This document shows, one piece after another, positions 3,001 through 64,000 of a stretch of DNA of 64,000 nt. Within the stretch, counting starts at the first letter, position 1. Each line of letters begins with the position of its first letter. A program made the position numbers and the translations under genes. The notes under the pieces are model-generated. The model saw only the letters and a list, made by a program, of their open reading frames with translations, searched no databases and was not told the origin of the DNA. This DNA comes from Polymyxa betae A26-41. Taxonomy: Eukaryota; Protista; Endomyxa: Phytomyxea. The stretch covers positions 148,697 to 212,696 of the forward strand of contig RBZT01000415.1 of the NCBI GenBank assembly GCA_003693705.1, written 5' to 3'.

Positions 3001-6000
3001 GGTCGATCATAATCTTTGCTTCTTTCGAATCTGCATTTACTATATCTGCATGTTGAGATAAGAATGTCCTGAAAATTCTCAAGCAAATTCGCCTGATCGA
3101 ATAAGAGCTTTCAGAAATAAGCTCCGATAAGAGAGCTAGCCAAGGATACTGGAACTGCTGCAAAGCTTTTGCAGCATTTCGTGGAGTGATACATTGCAGA
3201 AGAGATAGAAGAAGTTGCTGTAAACAGTTTCCCGATGATGAATGGCTATGGGATAGCGGGGACTGCTGTAGCAACCTATAGAAAATATCAACAGTTAGCA
3301 AATAGCGAGTTTCTGCACTACCATCGTGATTGAGACAGCTCTGGCTCGAAACAGCAATCAAGCACTGTCAATCTAGTATCAAGCCCAGTGAAACACGCTG
3401 CAAGTCGAACGGGGCAGTTTAAATTGCGAAAAGCAACACCTTGAGAAATGCCATTTCGAAAAAAGGTTATGGTTCGGTTATCGAAATCAAGCACGATCTC
3501 GATTATATCGCCAGAAGCATACGTCTCTCCGTACCGCTGAGAAGCGGATGCATGATATTTGAATCCGGTTGCAGCAACGTAACCCCATCCACCTTGCGAC
3601 CCGCCAATACAGTTGCTGACCAGACTGTCCACTTTAAATGAAAGAGGGACAAGACCGACTACGATTTTCCAGGTATTGAGGGTGTCTCCGCTACGGTCGA
3701 CAAGGACCCTTAACTTGTGTACTCCTGATGCATAGGTCTGTGCAGATCGGACAGCCTGCCAGGTATGGGTTCCTGATTTGTTTGTGATCGTGACTGGACG
3801 ACTGGCGACATCTCCAGAGAACAGAATATCGCTGCTGGTATTTGTCTCCCAAAAGTCCCATGGGTTGATAGAGTGACTTGGAACGTGTTGAGCAAACGAA
3901 ATGCGGTTGGCTTGAAAATCATGAGGACTCGGAACAATGACATTTTTTTGTAGGAAAGGGTACTTTAAAACTCCATACAATTCAATGCCACCTAATGCAA
4001 GATGCCTGAAATCGAGATTAAGTTCCAGTTACGAGATCAATGATATTGGATACCAGCTGTTATTGGAATTTGGCCCTGTCATGTAAATTCTGAACATAGT
4101 ATAGAATTCATTTGCTGACAATGCCCAAGAGTGAGATTGCCCTTTCTGATTTAGCGCAGGATCGTTGCAATGATTCCGTATAACATGCCAAGACTGACCG
4201 TCTATCGAGCCTTGGAGCTGCCAATTCCTCAGAGCCTCTACTTTATATGTTGTGTAATGGCGAAGAGTATAATAATTGGGGCGAATTAGTCTTCCCAGGA
4301 AATCGATAAGAAACCAAGAATTTGCAGTCGGTCTCGAGACGCATCTGCAGGCTGTGCGTCCAACAATGGAACTTGCAGGAGCCGATGTAGTCAGAACACC
4401 AGATGTTCGAACCTATAAATCCGTTAAAGCCAGTTGATAATTGCTCCAAAAGGCAACCTCTATCAGTCCAGAAAGTGCAGGGTTCCGAAAAGTGTCGTGC
4501 CCAGCATTTGTTGCCAGCCAATATATGATTCCGTTTCGATCAAAGTCGTGCTCATAGTGAAACTCATTATTTGAGCTTTGTATCAAAAGCGATGAATTGG
4601 ATTTTTGTGAAGTGTGAATTGTTGCAGGACTCTTTATAATTCTCTAAGCATTAAAACTAAGCAAGAGTATCTTCTATATATTGGACGTACCTGATTGAAT
4701 CCCGAGTCAGAATTCAGTTCATCGAAGTTCTTGCCTTCTTTGCGAATGCGAATCTCGCAAATAAGGGTAGAGGTCATCGCCTTGAGCATTTCATGGCAAA
4801 CTTTGTCATCGGGATTTTGTGATACAATGTATGTGATCTGACTTAGAAACATTCGGAAACATGCCCAATAGAAATATGGATCCTCCGACTGATACGCTGA
4901 CTCCACAGAAAGCCACGTGGTCTCAGGCCCATTTGAGTTACCAAAGCCACAAGAATTGATCACATATCGTAACAAGTTGCAATTACTTAGAGAATAGAAA
5001 TCGCCAGGTTGCAAAAAGAACGAGCACATCGCGAACGGGATGTATTTAGGAATGCAATCTTTTGATAGCAAAAATAAAAGGATTGAGAAATGCTGTTCCT
5101 TCAATTCCTGGTTCGTTTCAAGTGCAGAATGAAAAATTTCTCGACCCTGGCTCTGTAGAGAACCCGAACAATGTAAACTCGCCTCTAATTGTTGCGATTC
5201 GAAGTTCTTGGCGGAGAAATCTGCCAATTGCTTTAAGTGGAAAGATTCATCAGCAAAATCCTTCTCACTGGTTTCAATCGGGTCGGCAGGATTCCCACAA
5301 GGATTGTCTTGCCAACGCTGATCCTCTGAAATTTCTTGGAGGCCAAATTGAATACAATCGATTAGAGTTTTCCTAATTTGGAATTGCGATTGTCCAGAGC
5401 AGTTCTCCAGATTTAATTCTGTCTCTCTGTCGAAATTCAAAGTAATATTGGACATCGAAGCGGCAGAGTTCTCTACGACAGATTTAGGGTCAGAGATCAG
5501 ATGCTTCGCTAGTTGGTAGATCCCAGTCTCTGACTTCAGCGAAAGCAGAATGGTGGAGAAATCTTGATAACAAGCCGACCGAAAACCAGCTAAGCATCGA
5601 CGATGAAGTAGGATTTTCTCCACATCATTAGCAGATATAGTTTCATCTTGACAAAAGGTTACAAGCTGATGAACAACAGCTGGCATTTCTGAACAAATGT
5701 CGGAAATATCCAAGCTCCGCTTCGATTTGACAAAGGTAGAATGTCGCCCATCGAAGACCATTGGATAGAGCTGAAAGAGAAATGAAAGTTTGTCGATATA
5801 CGAATGCAAAAAAGATCCACTTTTTGAATCGTTTTTCCACGATATATCAGATTCAACCTGTCTGTAAAAGCTTATTGCTGACTTGCCAATGCTCTGAAGG
5901 AGTGGTTGGGTACCAATATGATCTGCTTCGGAACAAGCGGACAGAAAACTACCAGTTTCTCTAGAGATTATGTATGAGCGAAAGAGCTCTGTCAGATCAC

Positions 6001-8543
6001 AGTGATAAACGAGAAGGGATAAACAGTAAACGAACACAATATTCTCAGAAAGTTGGAGCAAGTGCCGACATAAAGTTGCATCTTGCAATCTTGACAGTTC
6101 AAATACTGTTTTCTTTAAGGGTTGCCTTTTGATAAATTGAGAGATTAGCCATTCCCGGTTGTCAGCGTCTTTATCGTGATCAACAGGCTCAGTAAGACCT
6201 TTCCTCCTCGGTGTAGTTGATGGTTGACAATCGCTATGCATCCCATAATCAGAAACCAGTCCAGCAGTCAAGATATCAGTATATGGTCTAGGTGGCAAGG
6301 TTGGTAGGTCGAGGTTCAAAACAAGTGCAGTACATCGACCGTATAGCCATAAACTACATTGATAGATATCCTCTAGCCAGCCTAGCATATTTGTGCCAGC
6401 AGAGTTGTTGATGATTATCTTCGACGTTGTCTTAATCAGGAGCCATCCATAGCGTTGACAGATTGCGAAAAGAACATCTAAAATTGGAATGATTGGCTTC
6501 AGTTCAGTCAGAATAGAATTAACGAAATTGAGCCCACTGCTTTCTATCAGAGCAGATAAAGCAGCAAAGCATGGGCGAGCAACTTGACCAATAAATAAAT
6601 CATTCATCGACGAAAGCAATTGGAAAAGTGGCTGCTGATTTGCAGCATCAAAGTTGTTAATCTTCATCCAGATGCATTCCAAGAGGACATTGAGGTTTTT
6701 TAAGACAGCCTTCGAGTAAAGCCCAAGCAGTTCATATCTCGATTCCAGATTTTGCTTTTCGCTGAGGCCTTGTTCAGCTGTGAAGATGAAAAGGGATGTC
6801 TGCAGCCTTTGAAGAATTAACAGCATGCTAGAAGCCTTGGAATAAATATCATGAGACTTTAGAAAAGAGAGGCTTTGCCGTCCAGATATATTTACGAGCT
6901 GAATCAACCCGAAACGATCGTTCTCGTCGAATGTGCCAAATTCTTTGATAAGTTTGCAGATTACGTCAGCAGAAGACGTCTTGGTGATCAAAAATTCAAT
7001 CAATTTACTTTTACCAACGTGCTTGCCATTGACATCAGAAACCAATCGTACTTCGAGAAAGCCGACATCTAGCAAGTCAACAAGACATTGAATCTGCTGG
7101 TTTAATTTTGGACAGAGGAATTCCAGTCCAGCAGACAATGCTTCGGAAGCTTTGTCCATTATAATGAACTGTTTTTGTGACATCAGATCGTTTCCAGCAC
7201 CATTGCGTTCTTTCGGAAACTCTTTCAAAAAGCGCATTAACCATTCTTTCAGTCCATTTATGCATTCATGTTTCATTCCAATTGCATCCATACTTAACTG
7301 AAGCTTGGTCACTTGAGATAGCTGGCCTGTGAGCAATTGCAGAAATGATATTGTCAGATCCATGAGCAAAGGCAATAACATCTCAGGGCAGCTTTTTGGT
7401 GTGAAATACCTGCCACCGGCCATCTCAAGTAACAAACACAAGTTGTGAAAAGTAGATTGCCTGGCTTCAAAGACGAATTCGGAGCTGGAATCGCTCATGC
7501 ATTCGCTCTCGTGAAATGCAGGTAGCAAGAGTAAGCGTTCAAGTTCACTAACAATCAGCTGGACCGCTTCTTCGGCCTTGACATTCTCAGAGGATTCTGC
7601 ATCACTTTCTACATTAGACTCTCGCAGTTGGGATACATGCTGCAGATGAGATGCAGCGCAAGGTGACTGTTGTTGTTCTAAAAATTGTTTGTTAGCTTCA
7701 TTAATAAAATACAGTGGTCAAAATCGAGGGCGACATACCTGGCTCGTGTTTTCTACAGAGTTTATAGTTTTGTAGAAGAGTTATCTCTCGACGAATTCTG
7801 TATACTCCATTTTTGGAATTAAGTATGTCGTCAAGAAGACAGCAAACAACAGACAATACAGCAGATAAAGAGCCTCTTGCAATGGCTAACTGAAGCCCCA
7901 GTTCCGTTACCCGTTCGAAATTTGAGTTTTGTTCTTGAGCAACACCCTGAAAATAATGCAGAAGAGGCTCCATAACCACAGATATGTCGATGTTATCTCT
8001 ACGAGAAGGTAGCGATGGCAGGCTCTTCAATAATTCCTCAGACAAGTTGAGTATTTTGTCGAATAGACATTTATCCGACTTGGCAGAAAGTTGAATCAGC
8101 TTGATTATCAGGTCTGTCATTGACCGAAGCCCAGACTCTGAAGTCTGAATTCTGGGAGATTCGACCTTAAGGACGACAGATTGCATTCCAGTCTGCGATT
8201 CCATCCCTATTATGCTTCTGCCACGAAATGATTGATAAATTCTAGCCATAAGGTAATTACGTCGGTGGATCTCAATTGTTAGTGCATCGTTGAAGGTTTC
8301 TCCTGCAAAGGCAAGTACGTCGCGAATTGCGTTAATGACGATTTCTCTGGCCTCATCTTTGACAATTTTTCTATTAAGACATTCGCTTAAATTTAAGCAG
8401 CGAGGGTTAAGCTGTTTTGTCGTCTCCTGGAAATTCCTAGTATAATGTCGGACAAAATCGGACTGGAACAAGCCCGACGTCGCATCCAACAATATGGGCA
8501 GATCCTGAGCATCGATCAGATCGTTGCTAGCAGCATTGCCCAT
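1..8543 (-). CDS. Giant HERC-like protein, probable E3 ubiquitin ligase (5' part; continues beyond window start); RCC1 repeats, SPRY domain, two HECTD1-type SUN/discoidin-like domains
   Basis: Spliced chain of ORFs 7701-8543, 4634-7528, ~3990-4630, 3318-3980, 2675-3361, 1321-2724, then RCC1 exons. LAIARGSLSAVL resembles the large-HERC N-terminal motif. DFDRNGIIYWLATN...YTLRH...ALRNWQLQGS...LGGIELYG and a second copy GILYYLGTN...YALRH...ALRSWKIEG...LGGIELFG. SPRY: GGWGY...YGETYASGDIIEIVLDFDNRTITFFRNG. RCC1: FSFGKGDGGRL, HCLVLTHQGEVFSFGNGDHGRL. No HECT domain lies inside the window. Confidence 0.8.
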
Positions 8544-27698: not shown

Positions 27699-28807
27699 TC
27701 AACTTCTCCATAGAAATCTCCAGAAACTGTTGTAAGACCATGAAGGTCCTTTGTTGCTCAAACTGGGGCCGTTTTCCATTTCCGGAGCCATCTTGTCAGC
27801 CAAGCGTGTCCGGACCCAATGATTGTATTGATAGAAAGGAACTGCACTTGCTTCTTTAGCCAGGCTTTCATACAACTAGTCTAAATCAGTAATGGCCAGA
27901 GAGATCAATGAAAAAATTGAACCTCTTCGTTGGAAATCGTAAAGGCAGCTCTCGATAATCCTCTCTCAACAAGATCAATTTTACATGCCATCGCTGTCTG
28001 CCATAAATTAAACATCATTCGCATACATTCAGAGGTTCTTACAAGAAAGAAGAAATCCAAAAGAACATCATTTCCGTGCCGTTCGTCATCAATTTCCACA
28101 TAGCCTTCGGAAGTAAACCGTTCAGAGGCGCCAAGCTTCACAGCACTTGATCTTCTTATTCCTGTTCGCTTGTGATGACATTGATTCACTGTGCTAAAGG
28201 ATACATCGCGAGAATTTTCTATCTGCTTCAGATTAGTTTCAGCCTGTAGCAATTTGATCTTCGTGTTATTCAATTCCTGCTCAAGTCGACGTATTCGAGC
28301 GTATGACTTTAACACGAGCAATGAGTTCGCCATGGACATGGTATCGACTCGGGATTCGAGCTGGAAACAGTGCGCCCGGATGGCTTCAATATCACGACAT
28401 CTATCGCTCTCTCTAGCCCTAATTGCTTCCGCCTGATCTGCGATCGCTCTCCTTTCTATCTTTAGCTTTTTTTGGTCAGCGTGGATCGTAGACAGCACCG
28501 CTTGAAGTGACTTCTCCATACGACTTGCGCGCCCTTCATCAACGGATGAAGATCTGGCTTGCTGCAATTCAGCGAGCTCTGCTGATAGCGTTAAGATCTC
28601 TTCATCACTAGATGTTAGCTTTCGCCGAAGGTCGGCAACCAGCTCGCTTAAAGCACGTTCTCGTTCCAGAGCTTCACGAAGCTGTTGACGAAGGTCCTCA
28701 TTGGCATTCAACAAACTGGTGCCTAGTTCGGCGGCCAAACGCAGGTCTTTGGACATTTCAGTGACAACTGCAACTTCTTCTTCCTTAGGGGCGCGTGATA
28801 AGACCAT
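27699..28807 (-). CDS. Coiled-coil protein with CC1-box-like motif (candidate dynein adaptor) and small C-terminal helical domain
   Basis: SKDLRLAAELGTSLLNANEDL, then a long coiled coil. After two introns: DFFFLTAMACKID...ISNEELYESL...VPFYQYNHWVRTRL; TGA at 27699-27701. Confidence 0.65.
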
Positions 28808-34412: not shown

Positions 34413-36728
34413 ATGGCCCAGACTAGGAAGCAGCAATCCGAGATCGATCGCGTCCTAAAGCGTGTCCAGGACGGCCTGATCGAATTCGAATCAATCTGGC
34501 AGAAGGTGTATTCAGCACCGACTGCCGCCTTAAAAGAGAAGCATGAAGCCGACCTGAAGAAGGAGATTAAGCGTCTTCAACGCTATCGAGATCAAATCAA
34601 GACATGGCTTAGCAGTCCAGAGATCCGCGACAAAAACGAAATGCTCCAGGCTAGAAAGCAGATTGAACGGGATATGGAACGCTTTAAAGTCTGCGAGAAA
34701 GAGACCAAAACGAAAGCATTTTCGAAAGAAGCGCTTACAAATACGCCAAAGAAGAAGCTCCTGGACAAACCCAAGCTTGAAATTAAATCCTGGATTGATA
34801 AGCGAATTGTCTTGCTGAAAAATCAGCTTGGTGAGCGTGAATCCCAACTCGACGCCGAGCAACGAAAAGGCAAAAAACGGAATAAGGGTCAGGAAGAAGC
34901 GCATATCGACCATCTTCAACGCCTCGTCGAACGCTATAAGTTCCATATTGAACATCTTGAAATGGCCTGGGAAATGCTTTTTGAAGATGAAATTGTTGTG
35001 GCCGATGTTGAAGAAATCCAAGAAGACGTGGATTATTTCATCGAAAACAATCAGGTGCATATTTCGGGTCTCTTTACATGACTGATTGGAGAAGAAATTG
35101 GAAAATTCTGTCGATTTTTTTTTGGGGGGACCCGAGATTTGAAAAGATTTTTTCTGTAATCCGTTTTGCAACGATGTTTGAAATTCAAGGCTATCGCTGA
35201 CATTTTTCGAAAGGATGAGGACATGGAGGATTTCGACGATGCTTATATGTACGATTTATTGGCGTCTAAGCGCAATGCTAAGCCTCCACCTCCACCACCA
35301 GCTGTTTTGCTTGCTGAGGATGAAAATCTTTCCGATATCGAGCTATCCGATGACGATTACGATTCTCTGGCCGATGAAATCGCTGCCGACGAAAATGATC
35401 ATGATGCCGAGTCGGACTCGGATTCAGCTGTGCCTGCACCCGAACCAGTCGTCGAAGAGTCACCGCGGAGAGGATCTTCGAAGAAGTCAACCTTGCCTGC
35501 TCCATCTCCGCCGACGCCTGCTGAAGCGCATTCCAAAGATAAGCGAAAAGAAAAGCCATTGGAACAGGAGAAGCCCGTTCCCGAGCCTCAACCGACCCCG
35601 AAATCTACGCATGTAGCTAAGGCAGAGCGTGAAACACCGAAAAAGTCGTCAAAGCAGAGGAAAAAGATTGCTGTTGTTCCGGTCCAGGTCTCTGCGAATT
35701 ATCAAGACCCATCCCCTCAAGCGACACCTGTTATATCGAAATCTATCTCAGCTGTTGCCGCGAGCTCGCCCAAACAATCCCCTAGTGCACCCACTATTGT
35801 TAATCGTCCATCGGAAGCGGTTCAAGCACAGCCTCCAGCACCGTTCGCTAATATTGTCAAAGCCCAGCAACTCAAACAGGCGGAACAGGCTGCGTTGGCG
35901 CGAGCTCAGGCGGAGACAGCCTCGAGGCAGATTCCGCCAGAAACCGATACTCACGAACCGGCGACGAAAAAGGATGAACAAATTGAGAGCCAGCTGCAAA
36001 GCCTTCAGATTAATTCTAAAGTGCCGCCCACGACATCATTGTCGCCGCCGCCTGGTCTGCGGTCCGCTTCGCCGTTTGCAGGAGGTCCACCGCCAGGATT
36101 GGCTGGTCCCAGTAAGACGACTCTCGCTACGAAGCTTAAGCAAAAGCAGCACCAGGCCGCAGCTGCTGCTGAAGAGCCGGCTGCCGACCCTTCTTTACTT
36201 CGGCCGGCACGTCTCGCTGCTGTTCAAGCGTCGACGCAGCGTGAGGCTTCACCTAGCGTCAAGCAGCCTCACCTGTTCGATGCACCATTGTCTGAGGAGC
36301 AGCAGGCCAATTTGGAGATTTTGGAATCCAGTTTCAGGCATATGCCGACACCGGCCGATTCCGATCGACCAAAGCAATATTTACCTCGGAATCCTTATCA
36401 CACTCCAGCGTCGTGGCCCTCTACGCCGTCCCCTATATTCGAAGATCCGTCGTTCTTCGTCAAGTACGACACGGACACGCTGTTCTTCATATTCTACTTC
36501 CAGCAGGGAACGTATCAACAGTATCTTGCTGCATCGCAGCTAAAGAAGCAATCCTGGAGATACCATACGAAATATTTGACCTGGTTCCAAAGACATAAGG
36601 ACCCCCAGGTGACGACGGACGAATTCGAACAGGGTACGTACGTGTATTTCGACTACGACCATTCGTGGTGTCAAAGGATCAAATCCGAATTCACGTTTGA
36701 ATATCGATACTTGGAAGATGACCTTTAA
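34413..36728 (+). CDS. CNOT3: CCR4-NOT complex subunit NOT3/NOT5
   Basis: [45 protein letters not shown]; NOT box [20 protein letters not shown]...[14 protein letters not shown]; one intron at ~35054-35213. Confidence 0.96.
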
Positions 36729-40696: not shown

Positions 40697-41009
40697 GTAT
40701 TCCAATGTATATCTTGATTGTAAAAAATGCTGATAGTCTTCATGTCAATTTTGATTTCAAGGTCGATTCTGGGCCGATATCCCAAATCACAGCTTTCGCG
40801 CATTCAGTAGAACTTGCATACCATACATTCATTTGCCGAGCCCTTCATAATGACCATCCAAGCTTTGAGACATTTCAACACATATTAACTCTCTGGAGAA
40901 CGAATTTTATTGCCATGGATGGCACCGAAACCAATGCTACGTTGTCTGTTCAACAAAGCAACATTGTAACCGTTTTATATTCTATGATTGCTATTTAGGG
41001 CAAAACAAC

Positions 41010-44000
41010 TCATAGCTTCCGCTTGTCCTTGAAATTGCCTCCCCAGAACCTGCTCAAAATGCTCCCTCTTTTTGGTGGAGCATGCTCAGAGGGCGTACCC
41101 CTCTGTGTCGCTGGAATCGCTTTCACATTTGGCGTCACTATCTGCACCAAATCGCTGTCTTCGTCATCTTCTTCCTCAGCAATTGCATCGCCAAAAGAGG
41201 GTTCCGGTGGTTGCCCCAAGTCGAATTGTGTGTATGACGACAGAGCCGCAGACGTCGCCGTAACACTTGATGACGAGTTATGCTCCGTTATAGGTTGCAT
41301 CTGGCGAGAGCGCGAATTACTTCTTTGAGCAGAAGTGGCATTTGCTCGCACGAATGATTCGAATAACTGCACAGATGTTATTATGGTTAAACTCTTGAAA
41401 ATTATAAATAACTCATCGAATCATAACATGAAAACAAAATATACAAAACGGAACAGAGCCAAAGAGTACGAAACGAAGAGAACGGCACAGTAAGTAAACC
41501 GAACAAGTTACCTGGATCGAGCTCTTACGATTCTTAATTGGAACATTTGGAGATTCAGCTTCTTGCATCATCTCGTCAAATGATTGCATACGACGTCGCC
41601 AGCGTTGCTCCTCTTCACGCTTTTTATCCGGCGGCAGGTTTGAGTTCGAGATGCTTCGAACCAGCATGAAATCCCATTCCTGCCGATTGTCCCGCAACGA
41701 TCGGCAGGCGACTACGCAGCCTGGTAGCAATTGTGTGAGCGACATGAACAGAGGCGCCACGACAAAATCGAGGAAGTTCAGGGCCAGTTGTAGGCGATCG
41801 GTCGTAAGTCGGTCACAATTCGGCGAGATTGACAGTCCGGCCTCGCGTTCGATATCACCCTGGTTGTAGAATTCTAACAAGATGCAATCACTCCATCGCT
41901 TGGCAGTCGGCCAAGGTTTGCATTGGTTCGATATGTCAGCAGCATGCAGCAGCATGTTAACGACGGTCTCGCGATCGGCGGGAGAAAACAGCATTTGTGT
42001 CACACTGGGTCGCGGTGATAAAGTTCGATTTGGAGTCTGCCCGACTCGCGAGAGCAGATTGGAAAATTTCTCGCTCAGAGAGAAATGACAGTTCATATCG
42101 GTCGACAGAATCGAGGAGATAATAATCTTGCGAACGGTGCGAAACTCGGTTTGAGATAGACCGGCGAGAATGTTCGTTTCGGGCTTCTTCAGGATATGGA
42201 ACGTCATGGCGCAGTGGTGCTGCTCCAGTACGGCCTGATCGTTATACAGCAGGGCCAGCCGAGTTCCGGCATTAACTTGGTAGGTGTTCCCCAGACCTGG
42301 ATGTCCAATATCATGACAGACGGCGGCGATTATTAGCGCCAGCGATTCGAGCGGCGACACCAACGACGACGCCCCGTACGTCCGTAAGAGGCAGGCGGCG
42401 GTCTGGGTCGTATCGACGGCATGAAACAAATTATGATAAGCGTTATCCAGGTACGATGTGGCCACCTGCTGAAGGAACGCATTAAGAGTGTCTCGATCCA
42501 TACGAAATGGTGTCAGCAAGTCCAGACTCTCAAACACATTGAGTAGAAGGGCGGTCAGACCGGGTTTGTCGTAGGAAAATATATCAAAGTCCCAGGTGAG
42601 AATCGGGGACGGCGCTTCCACCGGAGCAATGACCAGCGATATGCGACGGTCTTCAAACTCAGAACTTGTGTGATCTTCATCTAAAGACAAGTAGTCCAGA
42701 TCACTCTGCAAAGAGCTAACATCAGACATGGCACGAGCGTTCCGGCCGATGAGATCGGAATCGCGCCGAAGGTCTTGAAGATCGTGGCCGTTGTTTGTGT
42801 AGCAGCGCGACAGCCATATTTTCGTCGATTCGTCGATTTCGCATTCATCCATGATCTTCATGATCCAGTCAGACGAGTGCATATCGTTGTTCAGAGGTGA
42901 CGAGTTGAGACTGGCGGCGATAAGCGGTGGATCGGTGGTTTCTGTCTCCGAGGTTGGCGGTATCAGCGACAAAACCAACGATCGCAAAGTGGACAGCTCT
43001 TCAGCAACGTTGTCAGAAGCAACACGACCGATGTTGACGTCGTCGATCAGATAGCGAACCACCTCAATGGCGTTCCAGATAGGGGCCTTGGCACGATCGC
43101 TCGGCGAAGATTTGCAGAGATGCCCAGCCCAGTCCCGATAGGTTGTCTCGTCATCTAGCCGCAATGAGGTGATCACCGGGCGATCATGTATGATGGTGGG
43201 CCCATGGAGCGACAAACTTGAGTGCACGGTCATGGTCAGTTCGCGGTCTTTAGAAACGATGCGAGACGATAGCAGATGGAATGCATCAACAACATCATCT
43301 TCATACTGCGATGGAGTCACGATCAGTGCATCGGTCGTGATCACCACCCATCGACGGTGCCAAATTCCAGCTGCGAGAATCTGCGCGAATCCCGCCTTGA
43401 TGGCTCCGTTGTCGGAGGCGACCGGACGCAGGACGTTTTCGTCGGTGACGTTTTCGTCGGCAGTTTGGAACGAGGTACCCTCAAGAAGCCACTGCTGAAT
43501 GCGACGCTTCAGATCTGGCGGGGTCGGTAACGCCTCGATTTGGGCGACAGGACGCCATGGGACGCGCTGCGACGCAATTTCCGAGATCGAAGAATTGACC
43601 GATTGCGAAGGGTCCAAATCCAGGCTTTGGCCGCGTCCATTCAGTTTCAGTGACAGAAGACTTCGGCGGACGCTGCTGCCGCCGGCACTGCCGCCGTTCG
43701 ATGCCGAACTTTTCAAGCGGCGAAGGATCTGGACGCTGCTGGCGAAACTCGAGCGTAGTGTATGTCGGGGCTGCATGATCGCGATCTTGTCGCTGCTGTG
43801 CGACGCTTCTTCCGAATTTCGATGGCTGTTTGGTTCGTTGATAACAGTGGCGGCCTCAGCAGCGTGCTTTTCGCGAACGGAGAACTGTTTTTCGATGGCG
43901 TTCGTGATTTTTAACAGCCAATGGCGGGCATCATCCATGGATGTGGCGGACAGGAAGAACAGGCGAGATGTATCGCTCGGAATGCCTTTCTTCGTCCAGT

Positions 44001-47000
44001 ACTGGGCCTGGACCTGGATCGTGAAATCTCGACCGACGTTTGGCGGCGCCATACTAACGCTGGCGCCATCCAGATAGATAATGCCCAAAACCTTGTTATG
44101 ATTCGGGTGGTAATAAAGCGCCAAAGCGTTCTCATGTAATGTCACCCAGCGCTTCTTCCATTTCGATGTGCTGACCCGTATGCGCATTGCAGAGCCGTTT
44201 ACAGGTTCTGCTTTCCGAATGGTCAAGAAACCGCTTTGTTTGACGCCGCCTTTGATCTACAAAAATTCAATCAAAACTTGAGTTAGTGGGACAAAAAAAT
44301 CACAACAATTTTGCTGTTCAGCTTGTATAAACACTGCATCAGAAACATTTTAGAAACATATTAAATATCAGGAAAAAAAGGGAAGATTGATTTTACCTGA
44401 AGACCAGCAAAATGATTACTACGAGTTTTCACTTCGTTTAATCGCGTCAGAAGAAGCTGCTTCTGGCTCAGCAGCAAGCGAGATAGGGCGACGTCACGCA
44501 TAAACCCATCGACAAATTGGTAGATGTTGCCGGCGCCGTTCGAGACATCAACCGATGCGTGAGCGATCGAAAACACGTTCAAATTAACGAGATCGTTCAC
44601 GACGTCCGGCAGCTGAGCAACATGCTCGAGAATCGGGTACGTTTTTGAAAGTAGGTCCATCTGGAACTCGTTTCCGATCACGCTGGCGACTTTGAGGGCG
44701 ATCTCATGAATGTGTCCAAGACGATCAATCCGACAGCCGAGAATGTTTTGAAGACAGATTGGGACCGGAACGGCCGACAGATCGGCGAACTTATCGCTGA
44801 GGACGCAGATCTTCCCCGACTTGTCAGAGCGAATATCGATCAGTTGCGCTTTCCTCAGCGCATATAAGATCTCTTTGCAGACGAGCGGATTCCCATGCGA
44901 TCTCTGAATTAAAATAATCCCCAATGTGTTCGGGACTTTGCAAACGCCAAGCGTTTCGAGAGCGATCTGATGGATCTCGTCGTTACCCAGAGCACGCAAC
45001 AGCAGACGGTGACTAATGGCCTGATTGAGAAGTTCAGTGTAATCAACGGGAACTTCGAGGTCGAAGGCGCCCAGATTCGATTTGTTAACAGGACGAGTTC
45101 CCAGAATCAGCACGATGTTGCTGAAATCGCAGGAGACGCGAAGCGCGAAACCCCAGGAGAGTTTATCCATCAGCAAGGCATCGTCGATGATCATTATCAT
45201 TCGGCCGAACTGACGAGAGAAGGCGCCTAAAAGAGCCAGCATGATGGCGGTACAGTTCGATAATCGCTCCATTGGAGACATTGCCAACGTTTCATCTGAT
45301 TCATCGAGTTCTAGAGGCAAGACTTCGTTCAGGACGCCAGCGATCGGAATCGACGATAAATATTTCGACACGAACGCTTTGCGATTCTGAGAAGGATCGC
45401 CCAGGCCGCGGTTCGTGATTTCGGTATCAATCAGGCGTAAAAACAGTTCGCGCCAGATGCCAAGCGGAGTTTTCGATTCGAGAGGATTTGCGGCGCGAAA
45501 CAGGACAAACGCGGGCGCCTCGCGTACGACCTGGGCAAGCAGACGTGACTTCCCGTATCCAGCCTCGCCTTCGACGATGAACGTAGCTCGATTCCAGCTG
45601 CTGACAGATAGCGTGATGATTTTGATGATTTCGGCAGCACAAAGTCCAATCTCGGTCTTATCATCGGGTTTGCGTTGGAGCAAAAGCTCCAAAACAGGAC
45701 CGAGCGTACCGGCCCGGGCCAAAGCGGCCAAGGCAATATGTTCGTTCTGGAGCTGGACGTTGTTTTCCAGCAGAACTGAGAACTGATCGGCTGTGGCCGC
45801 CTGTGAAATCAGCATCTTCTTCTTGAGGCTTTCTATGAGGCGTTCCTTGACCTGGACGACAGTTTGCAATTTGACACAATCGACAGAAACATAGCCGCGG
45901 TTCTGGATGAGAAACTTGGCAGTCTTATACGGGTGATCTCCGAAATCGGAATGACGCAGGCGATATTCGGAAGGGTCGTTCCGTGGTGACTGTTGGCTCT
46001 GTTCGAAACTGGATGCATCATGTCCAGAGAGAGTTCGAGACCCATTCGACTGAATCGGTATGGTCGCAGGCGGGCCCGGATTCGCAACTCGATCCATCTT
46101 GCGGGCCCAAAGTTCAGCCTCGCCGGCTGAAGGCGAATAGATTGTCGGCGAGTGCGGCATATCCAGCAGCGGTGGCTCGTCCTCATCAGCCAGCCAGTTC
46201 CGGGCATGTTCAGCCCAGGCAAGATCGTCAACAGTTGTCGCCGGAGAATCATGCGAGAGATCTTCGATGCTGCAGGCGCGCGGCGGAAATGAATCCCAGA
46301 GGCTCGACAAAGTAGGAACTTGTGGCGGCGTCATCAGCTGCTCGTTCGGCATCGTCGCCGGCATCTTCAGCGATCGTGACAATTCCGCATGCGGGTTGTG
46401 CATCGAATGGACGAACTGGAAGGCCGACGGTGACACCGTCCCGTTGCTCGTGACCTTGTGCTGATTCCAGATCCCGTGCGGCGCCACGCTCGAAACGATC
46501 GGTTTGAAAACTTTAACAAGGTCGCGTTTGCCTTTGACGTTGATGGCCTGCAGCTCTTCGAAAGCCATTCCCTGACGGGACGAATACTGCGTCGTCTGGT
46601 CGCAGAGGACGCCGCCGCCTCGAGATTTGGCATACTGCATCAGACGAGCCGATAGATTCACGACGTCGCCGAGAACAGAGTATTCACGGCGTGACCTCGA
46701 CCCAACCACACCACAGAACGCTGTCCCGGTCGTGATGCCAATGGCGGGCGTAAACCCAAGACGAGTTAGTTGCTTCGACATGACAAGCGACGCAAGAATG
46801 GCCCGGTTCGAATCGTCTTCGTGCGCCACCGGGGGCAGCCCGAAAACAGCGACCAATGTTGAGCCTTTGTCATCGAGAAGGAACTTGTTAACCGAACCTT
46901 CGTATTGATAAATCGCAGTCTGCACTGAGAATATCACCTGTTGAACGCGATCTAATTCAGTCGACACATCATTACTGGCAATCTTGGTCAGCTGCTCCTC

Positions 47001-47912
47001 AGTGAAGCCCAGATTCGCAAATATTACAGCGACATGACGCAGCTCAGACGCCCAGCGCTCTTCAGTAGCGTTCAGAAAAGGTAAGACGGCCCCGGGGACA
47101 TAGTTCGAGATCGATTCAATCAATCGAACGTCGTTGACAGCATCGAGATTTGCAGTCTTCACGATTCCGACTTTCCTTAAGCGATCCGTGCAACGAGTAA
47201 CGAATGCATGTCCTGACGGGATAAGAGAGGCGACGAAATGGTCTTGAATGACGGACCAGGCTTCAGGCGAGCATACAACCTGTCCAGCAATGGCTTTATG
47301 CTCGCTGGCGAATGCCTGAATCAACGGCGATCCCGTTGCAAGATACTCCATTCGGGAAAGAACGCCGCCAACGTGAACGATGGAGCACTCACCGACGCCG
47401 ATGCCCAACTTGACGCTAAGAACAACGTCTTCTTGCAACTTGGCGTTGTGCATTTTCCTTTGAATTTCTAAAGCGCTTTGAACAGCGCGACGGGTGACTG
47501 TGCAGACATCATCGTCGCTTGGAGGCCAAAGAACTAATAAAGCATCGCCGGCGAATTTAAACACGTCGCCGCCCTGGCTGGCGATGACTCGAACCAATTG
47601 TTCAAAATACGAATTTAAATGTTTCGCCAATTGTTCACAACCTTCACGTCCTTTCATTGCTAGTCGTTCGGACAAGTCTGTGAAGCCAGACACATCGGCA
47701 AACAGAGCAACGGTTTCATAGCTGTGACGCCATGGCGGAGTCATAGCAGGGCTTCCGCCACTAGCATGATCACTTAGAAAGCGGATAATCGATGCCGGAA
47801 CATAGGAGCAGAGCGCATCGATAGAGATTCGAGCACCCGATTTGTGAAATTCAGCGGTTGGTAGTTCTAACGGTGGTTCTATTGCAAGTTCAAGAGCGCC
47901 GTCGTCGCTCAT
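41010..47912 (-). CDS. Bifunctional soluble adenylyl cyclase (ADCY10-like, tandem class III domains plus P-loop) - PH - PH - class I cyclic nucleotide phosphodiesterase, ~2205 aa
   Basis: Exons 47912-44397, 44256-41512 and 41366-41010 joined by phase-0 GT-AG introns. Motifs: FADVSGFT, KFAGDA, NKFLLDDKG, YSVLGDVVNLSARL, GEAGYGKS, IIDDA, WKKRWVTL, YHNLFHAVD, HDIGHPGLGN, LEQHH, HAADISN. Confidence 0.88.
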
Positions 47913-47984: not shown

Positions 47985-48599
47985 CTAGCATAACGGGCCG
48001 ATGTATTTCGTGTGAGGAAAGCGCTCATGTAACGCCGGCCACTGAACGTAGAACTCATCGATAATGGGACGCATAAGTCGTCCAGATAAAGACAGAGAAT
48101 GAACTCGACAGAAACTTTCGATAAAGACCAATTTACAGGGCCGAAACAAAATCGCACGCAATAAGAACGCCGCCAGACATACAGGGAGACATGTTCCAGG
48201 TCCATTGCAGATAACGATTTGCGGGTTTATATTGTAGACGACTTTAAGTACGTGGAGGAAAGCATATAACGTTGTTATGATTGATTGTGAAAATGACTGG
48301 CCGACCTGACGTGCCCGAGGAATACTATGGAGCTGGGCGAAATTGAAATCTACAGCCCGGGCGACACTATGCGTGTCTGTATTGGCGATGAAGAAATGGA
48401 GCGGTTGGTAACGGTCTTGGCTGAGATGACGAAGAAGTACGAGCAGTTCTGCAGTATGACCACCAGAACCCAGAACTGCCGCTGTCGTCAGGCACGATCG
48501 CCTCGCAATGATCGGACGAAGATCGGCACCTACTAACAAGCAGTATGCGAGACGAAAGCCAAATGCTATGAGTGCAGCGAGTAAGATGTATAGCCACAT
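47985..48599 (-). CDS. ALG14: UDP-N-acetylglucosamine transferase subunit ALG14
   Basis: VLGSGGHTAELL, IPRARQVGQS, CNGPGTCLP, FIESFCRVHSLSLSG, FYVQWP; intronless. Confidence 0.95.
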   Translation of the reverse strand: MWLYILLAALIAFGFRLAYCLLVGADLRPIIARRSCLTTAAVLGSGGHTAELLVLLRHLSQDRYQPLHFFIANTDTHSVARAVDFNFAQLHSIPRARQVGQSFSQSIITTLYAFLHVLKVVYNINPQIVICNGPGTCLPVCLAAFLLRAILFRPCKLVFIESFCRVHSLSLSGRLMRPIIDEFYVQWPALHERFPHTKYIGPLC

Positions 48600-48859
48600 C
48601 GTCAATGTATTCGTGATCGAGACACAACGAACACGCAATGAACCAGAACCGCGCTTAGTCTCGTGGCTGCGCTTCCGCTATTAAGGTCAACGGCTACCTG
48701 ATCAAGAAATGCTGTGGCAGCTGTGCAATCAACGATAGAACGAATTTATGGCTCTAGAATCATCATTGAATATCAAGAAGGGAATGATGTTGGATAAGAC
48801 ATGCACCGTCGCTTACTAAAGCATTCGATTGTCGTTTATAGCATTTCACTACGGTAGTT

Positions 48860-63065: not shown

Positions 63066-64000
63066 TTACAGGCAGAAATCCTTGGGATAGGCCTTCCGCA
63101 GCTCCTCCTGTAAACGGCAAACTTCAGAATACAGCGAGGACGCATCCTGCGAGTGGCCCTTATGTTTGTGCGCAGCGATTCCGGTTCCAATTGAAGTAAG
63201 CTGGCCAAGAAATGGAACTAACTGGAGATAGAGGGTGGCTGTGGATTCTGCTTCCGATTTCTGATGCATGGATTCTGAATAATCAGAAAGAAATTTGCCA
63301 AAAAGGCGGAGCTGCTGGTCGACCACATACTCGTACCGATTTTGCAGAGTTTGAAGATCTGGGTAATTCGCGATAGGGTCAAAATGTTGCCCGTAATCCT
63401 TGGCGTGTTCTTGGAGATATTTCGAAACGTCCAGCAAGCGATCATGAGTTTTGCACCAGGGCGAGCTTAAAATCGGACCTGGAACTTTGATAGCTCGGTT
63501 TCCAGAAGCACGGATCAGGTCGGTAACGAGAGGGCGGAGGCAGCCGTTCGCTGAAGTCAACACGACCGATTCGGGAGCGTAAACGGAAGAGCGCCAGAAC
63601 TGGTTAAAGCGACCAGCGATGGTCTTACGCCATTGCACGAAATCATCGCGTGACAATCGATCCTTGAGGACGTCGCATTTGCTGACGACGAAGACGATAT
63701 CGAATGGTTGAGTCACACCATAGGCCAACGTCATCATCTCCAGGTTCGTTTTAATGGTCTCCGGGACTTGACCACGTGATTGTGCCAGATCCAGAAAGAA
63801 GTAGATGCGCCGTACTGGAGCCCAATTATGGTGTTTGGCGAGCTGGACGGCCTTATCCATGCCGACCATGCATTCCTCACGCTTTTTGCTGGTCGGATTG
63901 CCGAACCCGGGAGTATCGATCACGACAATGGAATGTTTACCAATGAGGATCCTCTGGAGCGTGGTTGTGGTCGTTGGTTTGTCAGCGATGTTCCGACCCG
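63066..64000 (-). CDS. TRAFAC-class P-loop GTPase domain protein (3' part; begins beyond window end)
   Basis: PTTTTT (G2-like), VIDTPGFG (G3), VVSKCD (G4), TSANG (G5); open to the window edge, no introns seen. Confidence 0.7.
   Translation of the reverse strand, partial: GRNIADKPTTTTTLQRILIGKHSIVVIDTPGFGNPTSKKREECMVGMDKAVQLAKHHNWAPVRRIYFFLDLAQSRGQVPETIKTNLEMMTLAYGVTQPFDIVFVVSKCDVLKDRLSRDDFVQWRKTIAGRFNQFWRSSVYAPESVVLTSANGCLRPLVTDLIRASGNRAIKVPGPILSSPWCKTHDRLLDVSKYLQEHAKDYGQHFDPIANYPDLQTLQNRYEYVVDQQLRLFGKFLSDYSESMHQKSEAESTATLYLQLVPFLGQLTSIGTGIAAHKHKGHSQDASSLYSEVCRLQEELRKAYPKDFCL

What the first reader, a model, noticed from the sequence alone, without database searches (positions are those of the whole stretch)
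41010..47912. One polypeptide that may both make and destroy cAMP: soluble adenylyl cyclase / P-loop / PH / PH / phosphodiesterase fusion
Seen: the ORF track splits this into three ORFs. CAG|gtaaaa (44396)...tttttgtag|ATC (44257) and CAG|gtaact (41511)...gtgcag|TTA (41367) are phase-0 introns joining them into ~2205 aa. The PDE ORF as tracked starts at TTG in the middle of a PH domain's first strand. Established: tandem class III cyclase domains plus a Walker A/B module is the ADCY10/sAC architecture, and HDxxHxGxxN is the class I PDE signature. The known cyclase-PDE fusion CAPE of basal streptophytes has the PDE at the N-terminus and a membrane-type cyclase, so order and cyclase type differ here. 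Inference: a membrane-recruited (PH), NTP-regulated cAMP pulse or microdomain generator, possibly for zoospore motility. I cannot confirm that it is undescribed.
Basis: partly seen in the sequence, partly recalled or inferred. Interest (0 to 1): 0.88.

Follow-up and report, generated by a model that had tools for sequence, protein, structure and literature searches.

The report
Cyclase-phosphodiesterase fusion gene in Polymyxa
A three-exon gene of the sugar-beet root parasite Polymyxa betae most likely encodes one 2205-residue protein that joins a soluble-type adenylyl cyclase, a P-loop switch module, a lipid-binding PH domain and a cyclic-nucleotide phosphodiesterase; the same layout is conserved in other protists, and no paper I could search describes it.

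Summary
Three minus-strand ORFs are linked by two phase-0 GT-AG introns (44396-44257 and 41511-41367) into a 1172+915+118 = 2205-residue model.

**Domains.** Exon 1 holds tandem class III cyclase domains. Their best solved relative is human sAC, and every catalytic residue is present. A Walker A/B STAND-type NTPase follows. Exon 2 opens exactly at the first strand of a PH domain and ends in a class I PDE (272 bits).

**Organism.** The genome matches the Polymyxa betae draft assembly (1001 contigs, 27.09 Mb).

**Expression.** There is no transcript evidence from this organism: four RNA runs laid no reads.

**Comparative support.** At least 15 homologues of 2100-3300 aa carry cyclase x2, AAA_16, PH (some also C2) and PDE in one uninterrupted ORF. 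They include MMETSP transcripts (Paraphysomonas) and Hondaea fermentalgiana GBG26248.1. All are colinear with exon 1 followed by exon 2. Cyclase and PDE trees each place the fused proteins in one supported clade with the same deep split, so the fusion is old and inherited as a unit.

**Weaker points.**
- The second PH domain is unconfirmed.
- The bicarbonate-site arginine of sAC is a phenylalanine across the family.
- The "invariant" substrate glutamine of class I PDEs is Ala here and Ser in most relatives, so PDE specificity is open.

**Novelty.** No paper describing this architecture was found. It is a new variant alongside plant CAPE. Exons were never joined for any search.

The parts
44397..47912 (-). 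Exon 1 (1172 aa): the start ATG at 47912, tandem cyclase domains, a linker, and a STAND-type P-loop NTPase with a helical tail.
   Evidence: It is an open frame whose length is a multiple of three, followed by a GT donor at 44396. Homologues align from aa 31 to about aa 1160.
47244..47720 (-). Cyclase domain C1 (aa 65-223). It carries the metal-binding Asp73 and Asp123 and Lys119, which matches human sAC Lys95. Phe201 stands where human sAC has Arg176.
   Evidence: Pfam PF00211 scores 35.3 bits. The alignment to human sAC 4cm2/4clf supports the residue mapping. These residues are invariant in 21 relatives, and their coordinates were verified.
46515..47132 (-). Cyclase domain C2 (aa 261-466). 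It carries Lys343 (adenine-specifying), Ser412 (Thr405 of human sAC), Asn419 and Arg423.
   Evidence: Pfam PF00211 scores 35.6 bits. The alignment to human sAC aa 258-455 supports the mapping, and the family alignment agrees.
45153..45581 (-). P-loop NTPase module (aa 778-920), with Walker A GEAGYGKS at 45546-45569 and Walker B IIDDA at 45177-45191.
   Evidence: AAA_16 gives E 4e-5 at 24.5 bits, below the 32.6 cut-off here but above it in relatives P0036, P0049 and P0040. There are weak NACHT, AAA_22 and nSTAND hits. The motifs were verified.
44257..44396 (-). Intron 1: 140 nt, phase 0, GTAAAA...TTGTAG.
   Evidence: It is 29% GC against 52-53% in the exons, has stops in all frames, and has CACTAAC 25 nt before the AG. 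There is no direct RNA evidence.
41512..44256 (-). Exon 2 (915 aa): PH domain, linker with a possible second PH-like region, and the PDE catalytic domain.
   Evidence: The frame is open from the acceptor to the donor.
43894..44241 (-). PH domain 1 (exon 2 aa 6-121). It has a basic K...WKKRW signature in strands 1-2.
   Evidence: PF00169 scores 44-51 bits against a cut-off of 25.1, covering profile positions 2-104. It aligns with the PH domains of 11 relatives, where W33 and K34 are nearly invariant.
43111..43365 (-). Candidate second PH-like region (exon 2 aa 298-382). It is unconfirmed.
   Evidence: PF00169 gives E 0.025-0.035 at 15 bits, below the cut-off. hhalign against the family PH profile gives probability 22% over 24 columns. 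The atlas score is 0.75. The AF2 single-sequence model has pLDDT 36.
41746..42468 (-). Class I PDE catalytic domain (exon 2 aa 597-837). His608, His612, His648, Asp649, His652, Asp774 and Asn777 are present. Ala825 (41782-41784) stands where other class I PDEs have the invariant glutamine.
   Evidence: PF00233 scores 272 bits. The best solved relatives are PDE4B, 4C and 4D at E 2e-58. The family alignment gives the residue mapping, and coordinates were verified.
41367..41511 (-). Intron 2: 145 nt, phase 0, GTAACT...GTGCAG.
   Evidence: It is 34% GC and has stops in all frames. It is predicted only: exon 3 has no homologue match.
41010..41366 (-). Exon 3: 118 aa plus the stop codon, a low-complexity acidic and serine-rich tail.
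   Evidence: A 119-codon frame is open directly after the acceptor. The chance of this is roughly 0.3% per frame at this composition (my own estimate). It is 50% GC, like the other exons. No relative aligns to it at E 1e-5 or better.

Best explanation
**What it is.** This is a single protein-coding gene of Polymyxa betae (Plasmodiophorida, Rhizaria). It is a member of an old protist family in which a soluble-type adenylyl cyclase has been fused to a class I cyclic-nucleotide phosphodiesterase.

**What the sequence shows**
- The cyclase is a tandem C1-C2 of class IIIb type, followed by a STAND P-loop NTPase.
- One secure PH domain comes next. Relatives have PH plus C2 at this position.
- The cyclase half has every residue needed to make cAMP from ATP.
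- The PDE half has every metal ligand and the general-acid histidine.
- Both halves are inherited together across deep divergence.

**What I infer**
- The protein is recruited to a phosphoinositide-containing membrane by its PH domain.
- It makes cAMP there, and its own PDE acts as a built-in sink, so the signal stays brief and local.
- The NTPase module serves as the regulatory switch.
- The glutamine that normally clamps the purine is replaced across the family by Ser or Ala. I infer that the PDE binds its substrate weakly or less selectively. That would suit an enzyme meant to remove only the high local concentration made by its own cyclase.
For: **Gene model.** Both introns are phase-0 GT-AG, AT-rich and closed in all frames. 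The PH domain starts at the acceptor, and no in-frame ATG could give a whole PH domain.

**Same order in single ORFs elsewhere**
- P0036, P0039, P0049 and P0101.
- P0308, P0310-P0312, P0314, P0315, P0317-P0320 and P0353.
- All are colinear with exon 1 followed by exon 2.
- P0310 and P0312/P0410 are MMETSP transcripts.
- L002 and L003 are two 6.7-kb contigs from two runs that start and end just outside the ORF, with AATAAA near the end, so they look like mRNA.
- In the nearest relative, P0034 (57% identical in the cyclase region), the cyclase ORF is followed by a PH-PDE ORF in phase across a ~66-nt GT-AG gap.

**Trees.** All fused proteins lie in one 100* clade on the cyclase tree and one 96* clade on the PDE tree, with the same deep split.

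**Catalytic residues.** The cyclase residues D73, D123, K343, S412, N419 and R423 are invariant. The PDE residues H608, H612, H648, D649, H652 and D774 are invariant.

**Genome context.** This is the only locus in the genome with both a cyclase and a PDE. Five runs from two studies hold 92-94% of the locus's sampled words.
Against: - There is no RNA evidence from this organism. Four RNA runs labelled with the species laid 0 reads, which is no test.
- A metagenome scan found no near relative.
- Exon 3 and intron 2 rest on sequence features alone.
- The AAA_16 match is below Pfam's cut-off here.
- The invariant PDE glutamine and the tyrosine that orients it in PDE4 are missing, so cAMP hydrolysis is not assured.
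- Arg176 of the human sAC bicarbonate site is Phe, so sAC-like bicarbonate control cannot be assumed.
- Membrane targeting, NTP control and the source-sink logic are inference only.
- The assembly was binned from a root-culture metagenome (PMC6328671). Assigning this contig to P. betae therefore rests on that binning.
Confidence: 0.7

Rival explanations
1. These are two adjacent genes: a sAC-like cyclase/NTPase ending 11 codons into the '140-nt intron', and a separately transcribed PH-PDE gene.
For: The genome is compact. The upstream Alg14 gene ends only 72 nt before the cyclase ATG. Reading through the donor meets a stop after 11 codons. Unfused cyclase/NTPase paralogues exist in relatives: P0035, P0037 and P0038 have no PDE downstream. 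No RNA reads are available.
Against: The first ATG in the exon 2 frame is codon 24, which would cut off the first PH strand. The donor, branch-like motif and acceptor are all present and in phase 0. At least 15 relatives have the junction region inside one uninterrupted ORF. The two halves have congruent trees.
Confidence: 0.06
2. It is one gene, but the PDE domain is not a cAMP hydrolase. It might hydrolyse another cyclic nucleotide (cGMP or a non-canonical one), or act mainly as a nucleotide-binding regulatory domain.
For: The glutamine conserved in all reference class I PDEs is Ala825 here. It is Ser, Ala or Thr in every member of the fused clade. The residue aligned to the PDE4 tyrosine that orients it is also changed.
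Against: All metal ligands and the general-acid His are invariant over a deep clade, which argues for catalysis under selection. The Asn aligned to Asn321 of PDE4D, an adenine contact from my memory of PDE4 structures, is kept. The closest solved relatives are the cAMP-specific PDE4 enzymes. The linked cyclase has the Lys and Ser/Thr pair typical of adenylyl cyclases, not guanylyl cyclases.
Confidence: 0.2
3. The cyclase half makes cGMP, not cAMP, as does the Dictyostelium sAC homologue sGC. The protein would then be a cGMP source-sink.
For: From memory, Dictyostelium sGC is a sAC homologue with a P-loop module that makes cGMP, so sAC-like architecture does not fix the product.
Against: Lys343 and Ser412 align with Lys334 and Thr405 of human sAC, the adenine-specifying pair, and are conserved across the family, with Ser or Thr in all but one of 22 sequences. 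The PDE is nearest to cAMP-specific PDE4.
Confidence: 0.08
4. The locus is not from P. betae. It would instead be a binned contaminant from another root-associated protist.
For: The assembly was selected from a metagenome by GC content, coverage and tetranucleotide composition (PMC6328671). I tied the genome to plasmodiophorids only through HSP90, which lies on another contig.
Against: The contig is longer than 212 kb in an assembly with an N50 of 61 kb. Its window GC of 41-46% fits the reported 45.1%. Runs from two separate studies under the species label hold 92-94% of the stretch's sampled words.
Confidence: 0.05

Closest known systems
Mammalian soluble adenylyl cyclase (ADCY10/sAC), full-length isoform
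   Same: Both have tandem C1-C2 class III cyclase domains in one chain followed by a P-loop STAND-type NTPase region. Human sAC is the best solved match for both domains (E 1.6e-42). The metal Asp pair, Lys/Thr(Ser), Asn and Arg are all present, and Lys95 of the bicarbonate site is kept.
   Different: Here there is no Arg at the position of Arg176; it is an invariant Phe in this family. A PH domain and a class I PDE follow the NTPase module, which sAC lacks.
CAPE (COMBINED AC with PDE) of Marchantia and other streptophytes with motile sperm (PMC5159850, PMC8115329)
   Same: One polypeptide carries a class III adenylyl cyclase and a class I PDE. CAPE is found in organisms with flagellated cells.
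   Different: CAPE has the PDE at the N-terminus and one cyclase domain at the C-terminus (PMC8115329); by my recollection of the CAPE papers, transmembrane segments lie between them. Its PDE groups with PDE9. Here the order is reversed, the cyclase is the tandem soluble type with an NTPase module, PH replaces the membrane segments, the PDE is nearest PDE4, and it lacks the invariant glutamine. PMC8115329 also mentions uncharacterised 'CAPE-like' AC+PDE proteins in Saprolegniales. Whether those belong to this family I could not tell.
Hondaea fermentalgiana GBG26248.1 (UniProt A0A2R5G8Z7, 2639 aa), Paraphysomonas MMETSP1103 transcripts, and unnamed metagenomic proteins
   Same: They share the domain order: cyclase x2, AAA_16 in most, PH, PDEase_I. 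They are colinear with exon 1 then exon 2 at 35-54% identity in the catalytic domains. They show the same Gln-to-Ser/Ala change and fall in the same clades.
   Different: The stramenopile branch has C2 (and sometimes GYF, GNAT or WW) after the PH domain instead of a second PH-like stretch. These proteins are named only by automatic annotation, as 'cAMP-specific PDE' or 'class 3 adenylate cyclase'.
Bacterial GGDEF-EAL proteins (by analogy only)
   Same: Synthesis and breakdown of one second messenger sit on one chain, often with sensor domains that choose between them (from established knowledge).
   Different: The folds and the messenger (c-di-GMP) are unrelated. There is no homology.

Membership tests
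Class III nucleotidyl cyclase | A match to the Guanylate_cyc (PF00211) model above the curated cut-off. | tested here: met
   There are two stretches of 35.3 and 35.6 bits against a cut-off of 21.9; the whole protein scores 66 bits.
Class III nucleotidyl cyclase | Two metal-binding Asp residues, a substrate-specifying Lys plus Asp/Thr/Ser, and the transition-state Asn and Arg. | tested here: met
   D73, D123, K343, S412, N419 and R423 align to D47, D99, K334, T405, N412 and R416 of human sAC. All are conserved in the family alignment (position 412 is Ser or Thr in all but one).
sAC / ADCY10-type cyclase | C1 and C2 in tandem on one chain, without transmembrane blocks, followed by a P-loop NTPase region. 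| tested here: met
   Both domains align to human sAC aa 32-199 and 258-455. Walker A and B motifs are present. AAA_16 scores 24.5 bits, below the 32.6 cut-off here, but 35-36 bits in relatives.
sAC / ADCY10-type cyclase | The bicarbonate site, Lys95 and Arg176 in human numbering. | tested here: not met
   Lys119 is kept, but Phe201 aligns to Arg176 and is invariant in 22 family sequences. Bicarbonate regulation therefore cannot be assumed.
Class I cyclic-nucleotide phosphodiesterase | A match to PDEase_I (PF00233), the HDxxHxGxxN signature, and the metal-binding His and Asp residues. | tested here: met
   The match scores 272 bits against a cut-off of 24.8. HDIGHPGLGN is present, as are H608, H612, H648, D649, H652 and D774.
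Class I cyclic-nucleotide phosphodiesterase | The invariant purine-recognising glutamine (Q369 of PDE4D2). | tested here: not met
   It is Ala825 here. It is Ser, Ala or Thr in all members of the fused clade that are aligned at this position and Gln in all 8 reference PDEs aligned. The HMMER alignment to PDE4B agrees.
PH domain | A match to PF00169 above the cut-off. | tested here: met
   The first PH domain scores 44-51 bits against a cut-off of 25.1, covering profile positions 2-104.
PH domain (second copy) | A match to PF00169 above the cut-off, or a confident PH fold. | tested here: inconclusive
   It scores 15 bits at E 0.025. hhalign probability is 22%. The AF2 model has pLDDT 36.
CAPE | An N-terminal PDE, transmembrane segments, and a single C-terminal cyclase domain. 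| tested here: not met
   The order here is cyclase x2, NTPase, PH, PDE. PMC8115329 describes the CAPE layout.
sAC-NTPase-PH-PDE fusion family (unnamed) | The same domain order in one gene, and placement inside the fused clade for both catalytic halves. | tested here: met
   The pieces are colinear with 16 relatives. The protein lies inside the 100* cyclase clade and the 96* PDE clade. A single transcript in this organism was not shown.

The most novel reading that the evidence does not exclude
An ancient family, spread across stramenopiles and Rhizaria, of self-limiting cAMP 'source-sink' enzymes. The built-in PDE has given up the purine-clamping glutamine found in every reference class I PDE compared here. 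It would therefore be a low-affinity sink tuned to the output of its own cyclase, producing membrane-anchored nanodomain pulses gated by a STAND NTPase.
Probability: 0.3. Interest if true: 0.8.

Novelty: new variant of a known kind. Interest (0 to 1): 0.6.

Why it matters
Cells are thought to keep cAMP signals local by placing phosphodiesterases next to cyclases. Here evolution appears to have hard-wired that pairing into one chain and kept it across a deep split within SAR (stramenopiles and Rhizaria).

The family offers a natural test of how a source and a sink on one scaffold shape a second-messenger signal. It also offers a natural experiment on what the 'invariant' PDE glutamine is for.

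It is a second, independent invention of a cyclase-PDE fusion beside plant CAPE, in organisms that also have flagellated stages. For Polymyxa and its relatives it points to a candidate regulator of zoospore behaviour. That role is only inferred.

Tried and rejected
- **RNA evidence.** The look-up of sequencing runs listed no RNA holder. Read laying on four RNA runs from four studies under the species label (X15, X10, X13, X19) over 40850-46849 laid 0 reads, which is no test. Both caps are used.
- **Near relatives' transcripts.** A metagenome-contig scan with exon 1 found none.
- **Joined protein.** I did not search or fold a joined (spliced) protein. Every search used exon 1, exon 2 or exon 3 by reference. 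As a result search for homologous proteins could not see full-length relatives directly from the window. I reached them through the length-free representatives search with exon 1, and then with the natural full-length relative P0036 as query.
- **Exon 2 alone.** It found only PDE4-type proteins at 35-38% identity and no stand-alone PH-PDE relative of 503-1601 aa.
- **Second PH domain.** Pfam, the atlas features, profile-profile comparison and a single-sequence AlphaFold model (pLDDT 36) all failed to settle it.
- **Sources of the relatives' runs.** The sources of SRR20314590, SRR33549325/6 and DRR671455 could not be named.
- **Literature.** Ten full-text searches found CAPE and a passing mention of CAPE-like proteins in Saprolegniales, but nothing on this architecture.
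- **Rejected.** Membership of CAPE (wrong order and wrong cyclase type). An oomycete or chytrid origin (HSP90 is 88% identical to Plasmodiophora brassicae, and the assembly statistics match the P. betae draft).
Full report
**1. Observation**

The ORF list gives three minus-strand ORFs: 44361..47912 (1183 aa, ATG), 41413..44226 (937 aa, TTG) and 41010..41372 (120 aa).
- Intron 1 runs CAG|GTAAAA, with the first intron base at 44396, to TTTTGTAG|ATC, with the last intron base at 44257.
- Intron 2 runs CAG|GTAACT (41511) to GTGCAG|TTA (41367).

The exons are 47912-44397, 44256-41512 and 41366-41010. They are 3516, 2745 and 357 nt long, so both introns are phase 0. The pieces give 1172 + 915 + 118 = 2205 residues.

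The introns are 140 and 145 nt, 29% and 34% GC against 50-53% in the exons, and closed in all three frames. Intron 1 has a CACTAAC branch-like motif about 25 nt before the AG. Other genes of this genome also show short GT-AG introns.

The TTG at 44226 is codon 11 of exon 2, inside the first PH strand. From the acceptor the Pfam PH match covers profile positions 2-104. From the TTG it covers only 15-104. The first in-frame ATG is codon 24.

Upstream in the same frame, an Alg14 gene ends 72 nt before the ATG at 47912.

**2. Domains**

| Region | Residues | Result |
|---|---|---|
| Guanylate_cyc x2, exon 1 | aa 65-223 and 385-466 | about 35 bits each, cut-off 21.9 |
| AAA_16, exon 1 | aa 778-920 | 24.5 bits, below the 32.6 cut-off |
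| Walker A GEAGYGKS / Walker B IIDDA | aa 782-789 / 908-912 | motifs present |
| PH, exon 2 | aa 6-121 | 44-51 bits, cut-off 25.1 |
| PDEase_I, exon 2 | aa 597-837 | 272 bits |
| Second PH-like stretch, exon 2 | aa 298-382 | 15 bits only |

The second PH-like stretch is not confirmed. Profile-profile comparison gives probability 22%, language-model neighbours score 0.75, and a single-sequence AlphaFold model has pLDDT 36. Exon 3 is a low-complexity tail with no homologue.

**3. Organism**

The window's genome has 27,085,814 bases in 1001 contigs. The Polymyxa betae draft genome is reported as 1,001 contigs, 27,085,946 bp and 45.1% GC (PMC6328671). Its HSP90 is 88% identical to that of Plasmodiophora brassicae, the best named hit. 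The organism is therefore a plasmodiophorid (Rhizaria), most likely P. betae, and not an oomycete or chytrid. The assembly was binned from a root-culture metagenome, so the assignment of this contig rests on that binning. Five runs from two studies hold 92-94% of the stretch's sampled words.

**4. One gene or two**

Direct evidence failed. No RNA run holds the stretch, and four RNA runs under the species label laid 0 reads, which is no test.

The comparative evidence is strong. I searched exon by exon and never joined the pieces. A length-free search with exon 1 found P0036 (2097 aa), P0039 (2194), P0049 (2294) and P0101 (2483). Each carries cyclase x2, AAA_16, PH (two also C2) and PDEase_I in one ORF.

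Using the natural full-length relative P0036 as query found more:
- P0308 (2204 aa)
- P0310 (MMETSP transcript, 2304 aa)
- P0312/P0410 (MMETSP1103, Paraphysomonas, a chrysophyte)
- P0314
- P0315 (Hondaea fermentalgiana GBG26248.1, 2639 aa, annotated only as 'cAMP-specific PDE')
- P0311, P0317-P0320 and P0353

All are colinear. Exon 1 aligns to about residues 1-1200, the exon 2 PH aligns just after, and the PDE aligns at the C-terminus.

L002 and L003 are two 6.7-kb contigs from two runs. They begin 67-94 nt before the ATG and end 50-66 nt after the stop, with AATAAA near the end, so they look like mRNA.

In the nearest relative, P0034 (57% identical in the cyclase region), the cyclase ORF on a 14.5-kb genomic contig is followed by a PH-PDE ORF in phase 0 across a ~66-nt GT...AG gap.

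Unfused cyclase/NTPase paralogues also exist: P0035, P0037 and P0038, the last from the same sample as P0034. In the P. betae genome this is the only locus with both a cyclase and a PDE.

**5. Age of the fusion**

On a quick maximum-likelihood tree of the cyclase region, all PDE-bearing proteins lie inside one clade of 42 rows (SH-aLRT 100). The many ~1350-aa sAC-like proteins lie outside it, and P. betae sits next to P0034.

On a PDE-domain tree, all cyclase-linked PDEs form one clade of 19 rows (SH-aLRT 96). It is apart from PDE4, apicomplexan and other PDEs, and it shows the same deep split into a P. betae/P0034/P0039/P0036/P0311 branch and a Hondaea/Paraphysomonas/P0101/P0310 branch.

Rows labelled as unfused inside these clades are mostly fragments or split gene calls. 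For example, P0063 is nearly identical to P0320, and P0309 to P0310. This pattern fits one old fusion inherited as a unit, with some later losses.

The limits are these: the searches were quick, support is SH-aLRT only, labels were set by motif, and most sequences are unnamed.

**6. Catalytic residues**

For the cyclase, the alignment to human sAC structures (4cm2/4clf, E 1.6e-42) maps the residues as follows:

| P. betae | Human sAC | Role |
|---|---|---|
| D73, D123 | D47, D99 | metal binding |
| K343 | K334 | adenine specification |
| S412 | T405 | adenine specification |
| N419 | N412 | catalysis |
| R423 | R416 | catalysis |
| K119 | K95 | bicarbonate site |
| Phe201 | R176 | bicarbonate site, not conserved |

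The cyclase residues in this table are conserved in the 22 family sequences (position 412 is Ser or Thr in all but one), including the Phe at the Arg176 position. An active adenylyl cyclase is predicted. Bicarbonate control is not.

For the PDE, the best solved relatives are PDE4B, 4C and 4D (E 2e-58). H608, H612, H648, D649, H652, D774 and N777 are present. The glutamine that is invariant in the reference PDEs is Ala825 here. It is Ser, Ala or Thr in every member of the fused clade that is aligned at this position, and Gln in all 8 reference PDEs aligned. The residue aligned to the PDE4 tyrosine that orients that glutamine is also changed. The catalytic machinery is therefore conserved, but base recognition is altered across the family.

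**7. Mechanism**

Shown by the sequence: a conserved single-chain pairing of a competent-looking adenylyl cyclase and a competent-looking metal-dependent PDE, with an NTPase and a PH domain between them.

Inferred:
- The PH domain has the basic K...WK-x-R signature in strands 1-2, nearly invariant in the family. I infer that it docks the enzyme on a phosphoinositide membrane.
- The cyclase makes cAMP there, and the tethered PDE limits its spread and duration.
- The STAND module gates activity.
- The missing glutamine would make the PDE a low-affinity sink that acts mainly on its own cyclase's output.
- A role in zoospore behaviour is plausible, since the named holders have flagellated stages, but it is untested.

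**8. Comparison with the known**

The protein works like a sAC joined to a PDE4-like enzyme. It is not CAPE. In CAPE the PDE is N-terminal and a single cyclase domain is C-terminal, with (by my recollection) membrane segments between them, and the PDE is nearest PDE9 (PMC5159850, PMC8115329).

PMC8115329 notes uncharacterised AC+PDE proteins in Saprolegniales. I could not tell whether these belong to this family.

Ten full-text searches found no description of the sAC-NTPase-PH-PDE layout. That library lacks most subscription journals. Members of the family are already in public databases under generic names.

**9. Verdict**

The fusion reading is well supported by comparison, but no transcript has been seen in this organism. 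The second PH domain and cAMP specificity of the PDE remain open. The finding is a new variant of a known kind (cyclase-PDE fusions and the sAC family) and one member of a conserved, apparently undescribed protist family. Interest: 0.6.

Noticed in passing
window 41782-41784 (Ala825 of exon 2); relatives P0036-P0320: The 'invariant' purine-recognising glutamine of class I PDEs is replaced by Ser, Ala or Thr in every member of the cyclase-linked PDE clade. It is Gln in all reference PDEs aligned. All metal ligands are kept.
   Followed up: yes
window 47310-47312 (Phe201 of exon 1): The position of Arg176 in the human sAC bicarbonate site is an invariant Phe (QAF motif) in all 22 family sequences. 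Lys95's equivalent is kept.
   Followed up: yes
window 45762-45896 (exon 1 aa 673-717): There is a weak Plexin_RBD (ubiquitin-like fold) hit at E 0.004, below the cut-off, between the cyclase and the P-loop. The unfused relative P0038 has a weak Ubiquitin_3 hit at its C-terminus.
   Followed up: no
window 47985-48638 (-): An Alg14-family ORF (E 3e-57) on the same strand ends only 72 nt before the cyclase ATG, so intergenic spacing here is very tight.
   Followed up: partly
window 35166-36728 (+): This ORF carries a NOT2/NOT3/NOT5 C-terminal domain (E 3e-38). Several other long ORFs (1321-2724, 4634-7528, 7701-8543, 27905-28807, 63066-63923) have no Pfam match.
   Followed up: no
L004 8738-14527 and L009 8001-11954 (both from run DRR671455): One unnamed organism carries both a fused copy (a cyclase ORF, then a PH-PDE ORF across a short phase-0 intron) and an unfused cyclase/NTPase paralogue that abuts a convergent gene.
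   Followed up: partly
relatives P0311, P0353, P0101, P0049, P0061: Family members carry extra modules: GNAT acetyltransferase (P0311), WW (P0353), GYF and C2 (P0101), C2 (P0049), and FYVE in the PDE-less relative P0061.
   Followed up: no
G000 C467:77988-79193, C720:144670-145341, C621:168916-169416, C355:22763-23221: There are other cyclase-domain loci in the same genome, including a second tandem pair on C467 with no PDE nearby. Earlier notes of the scan describe a flippase-cyclase chimera with DEP domains elsewhere in this genome.
   Followed up: no
runs X15, X10, X13, X19: Four RNA runs listed under the same species label as the DNA holders laid no reads at all on 6 kb of this locus. Either the label is broad or the parasite's share of these libraries is very small.
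   Followed up: no
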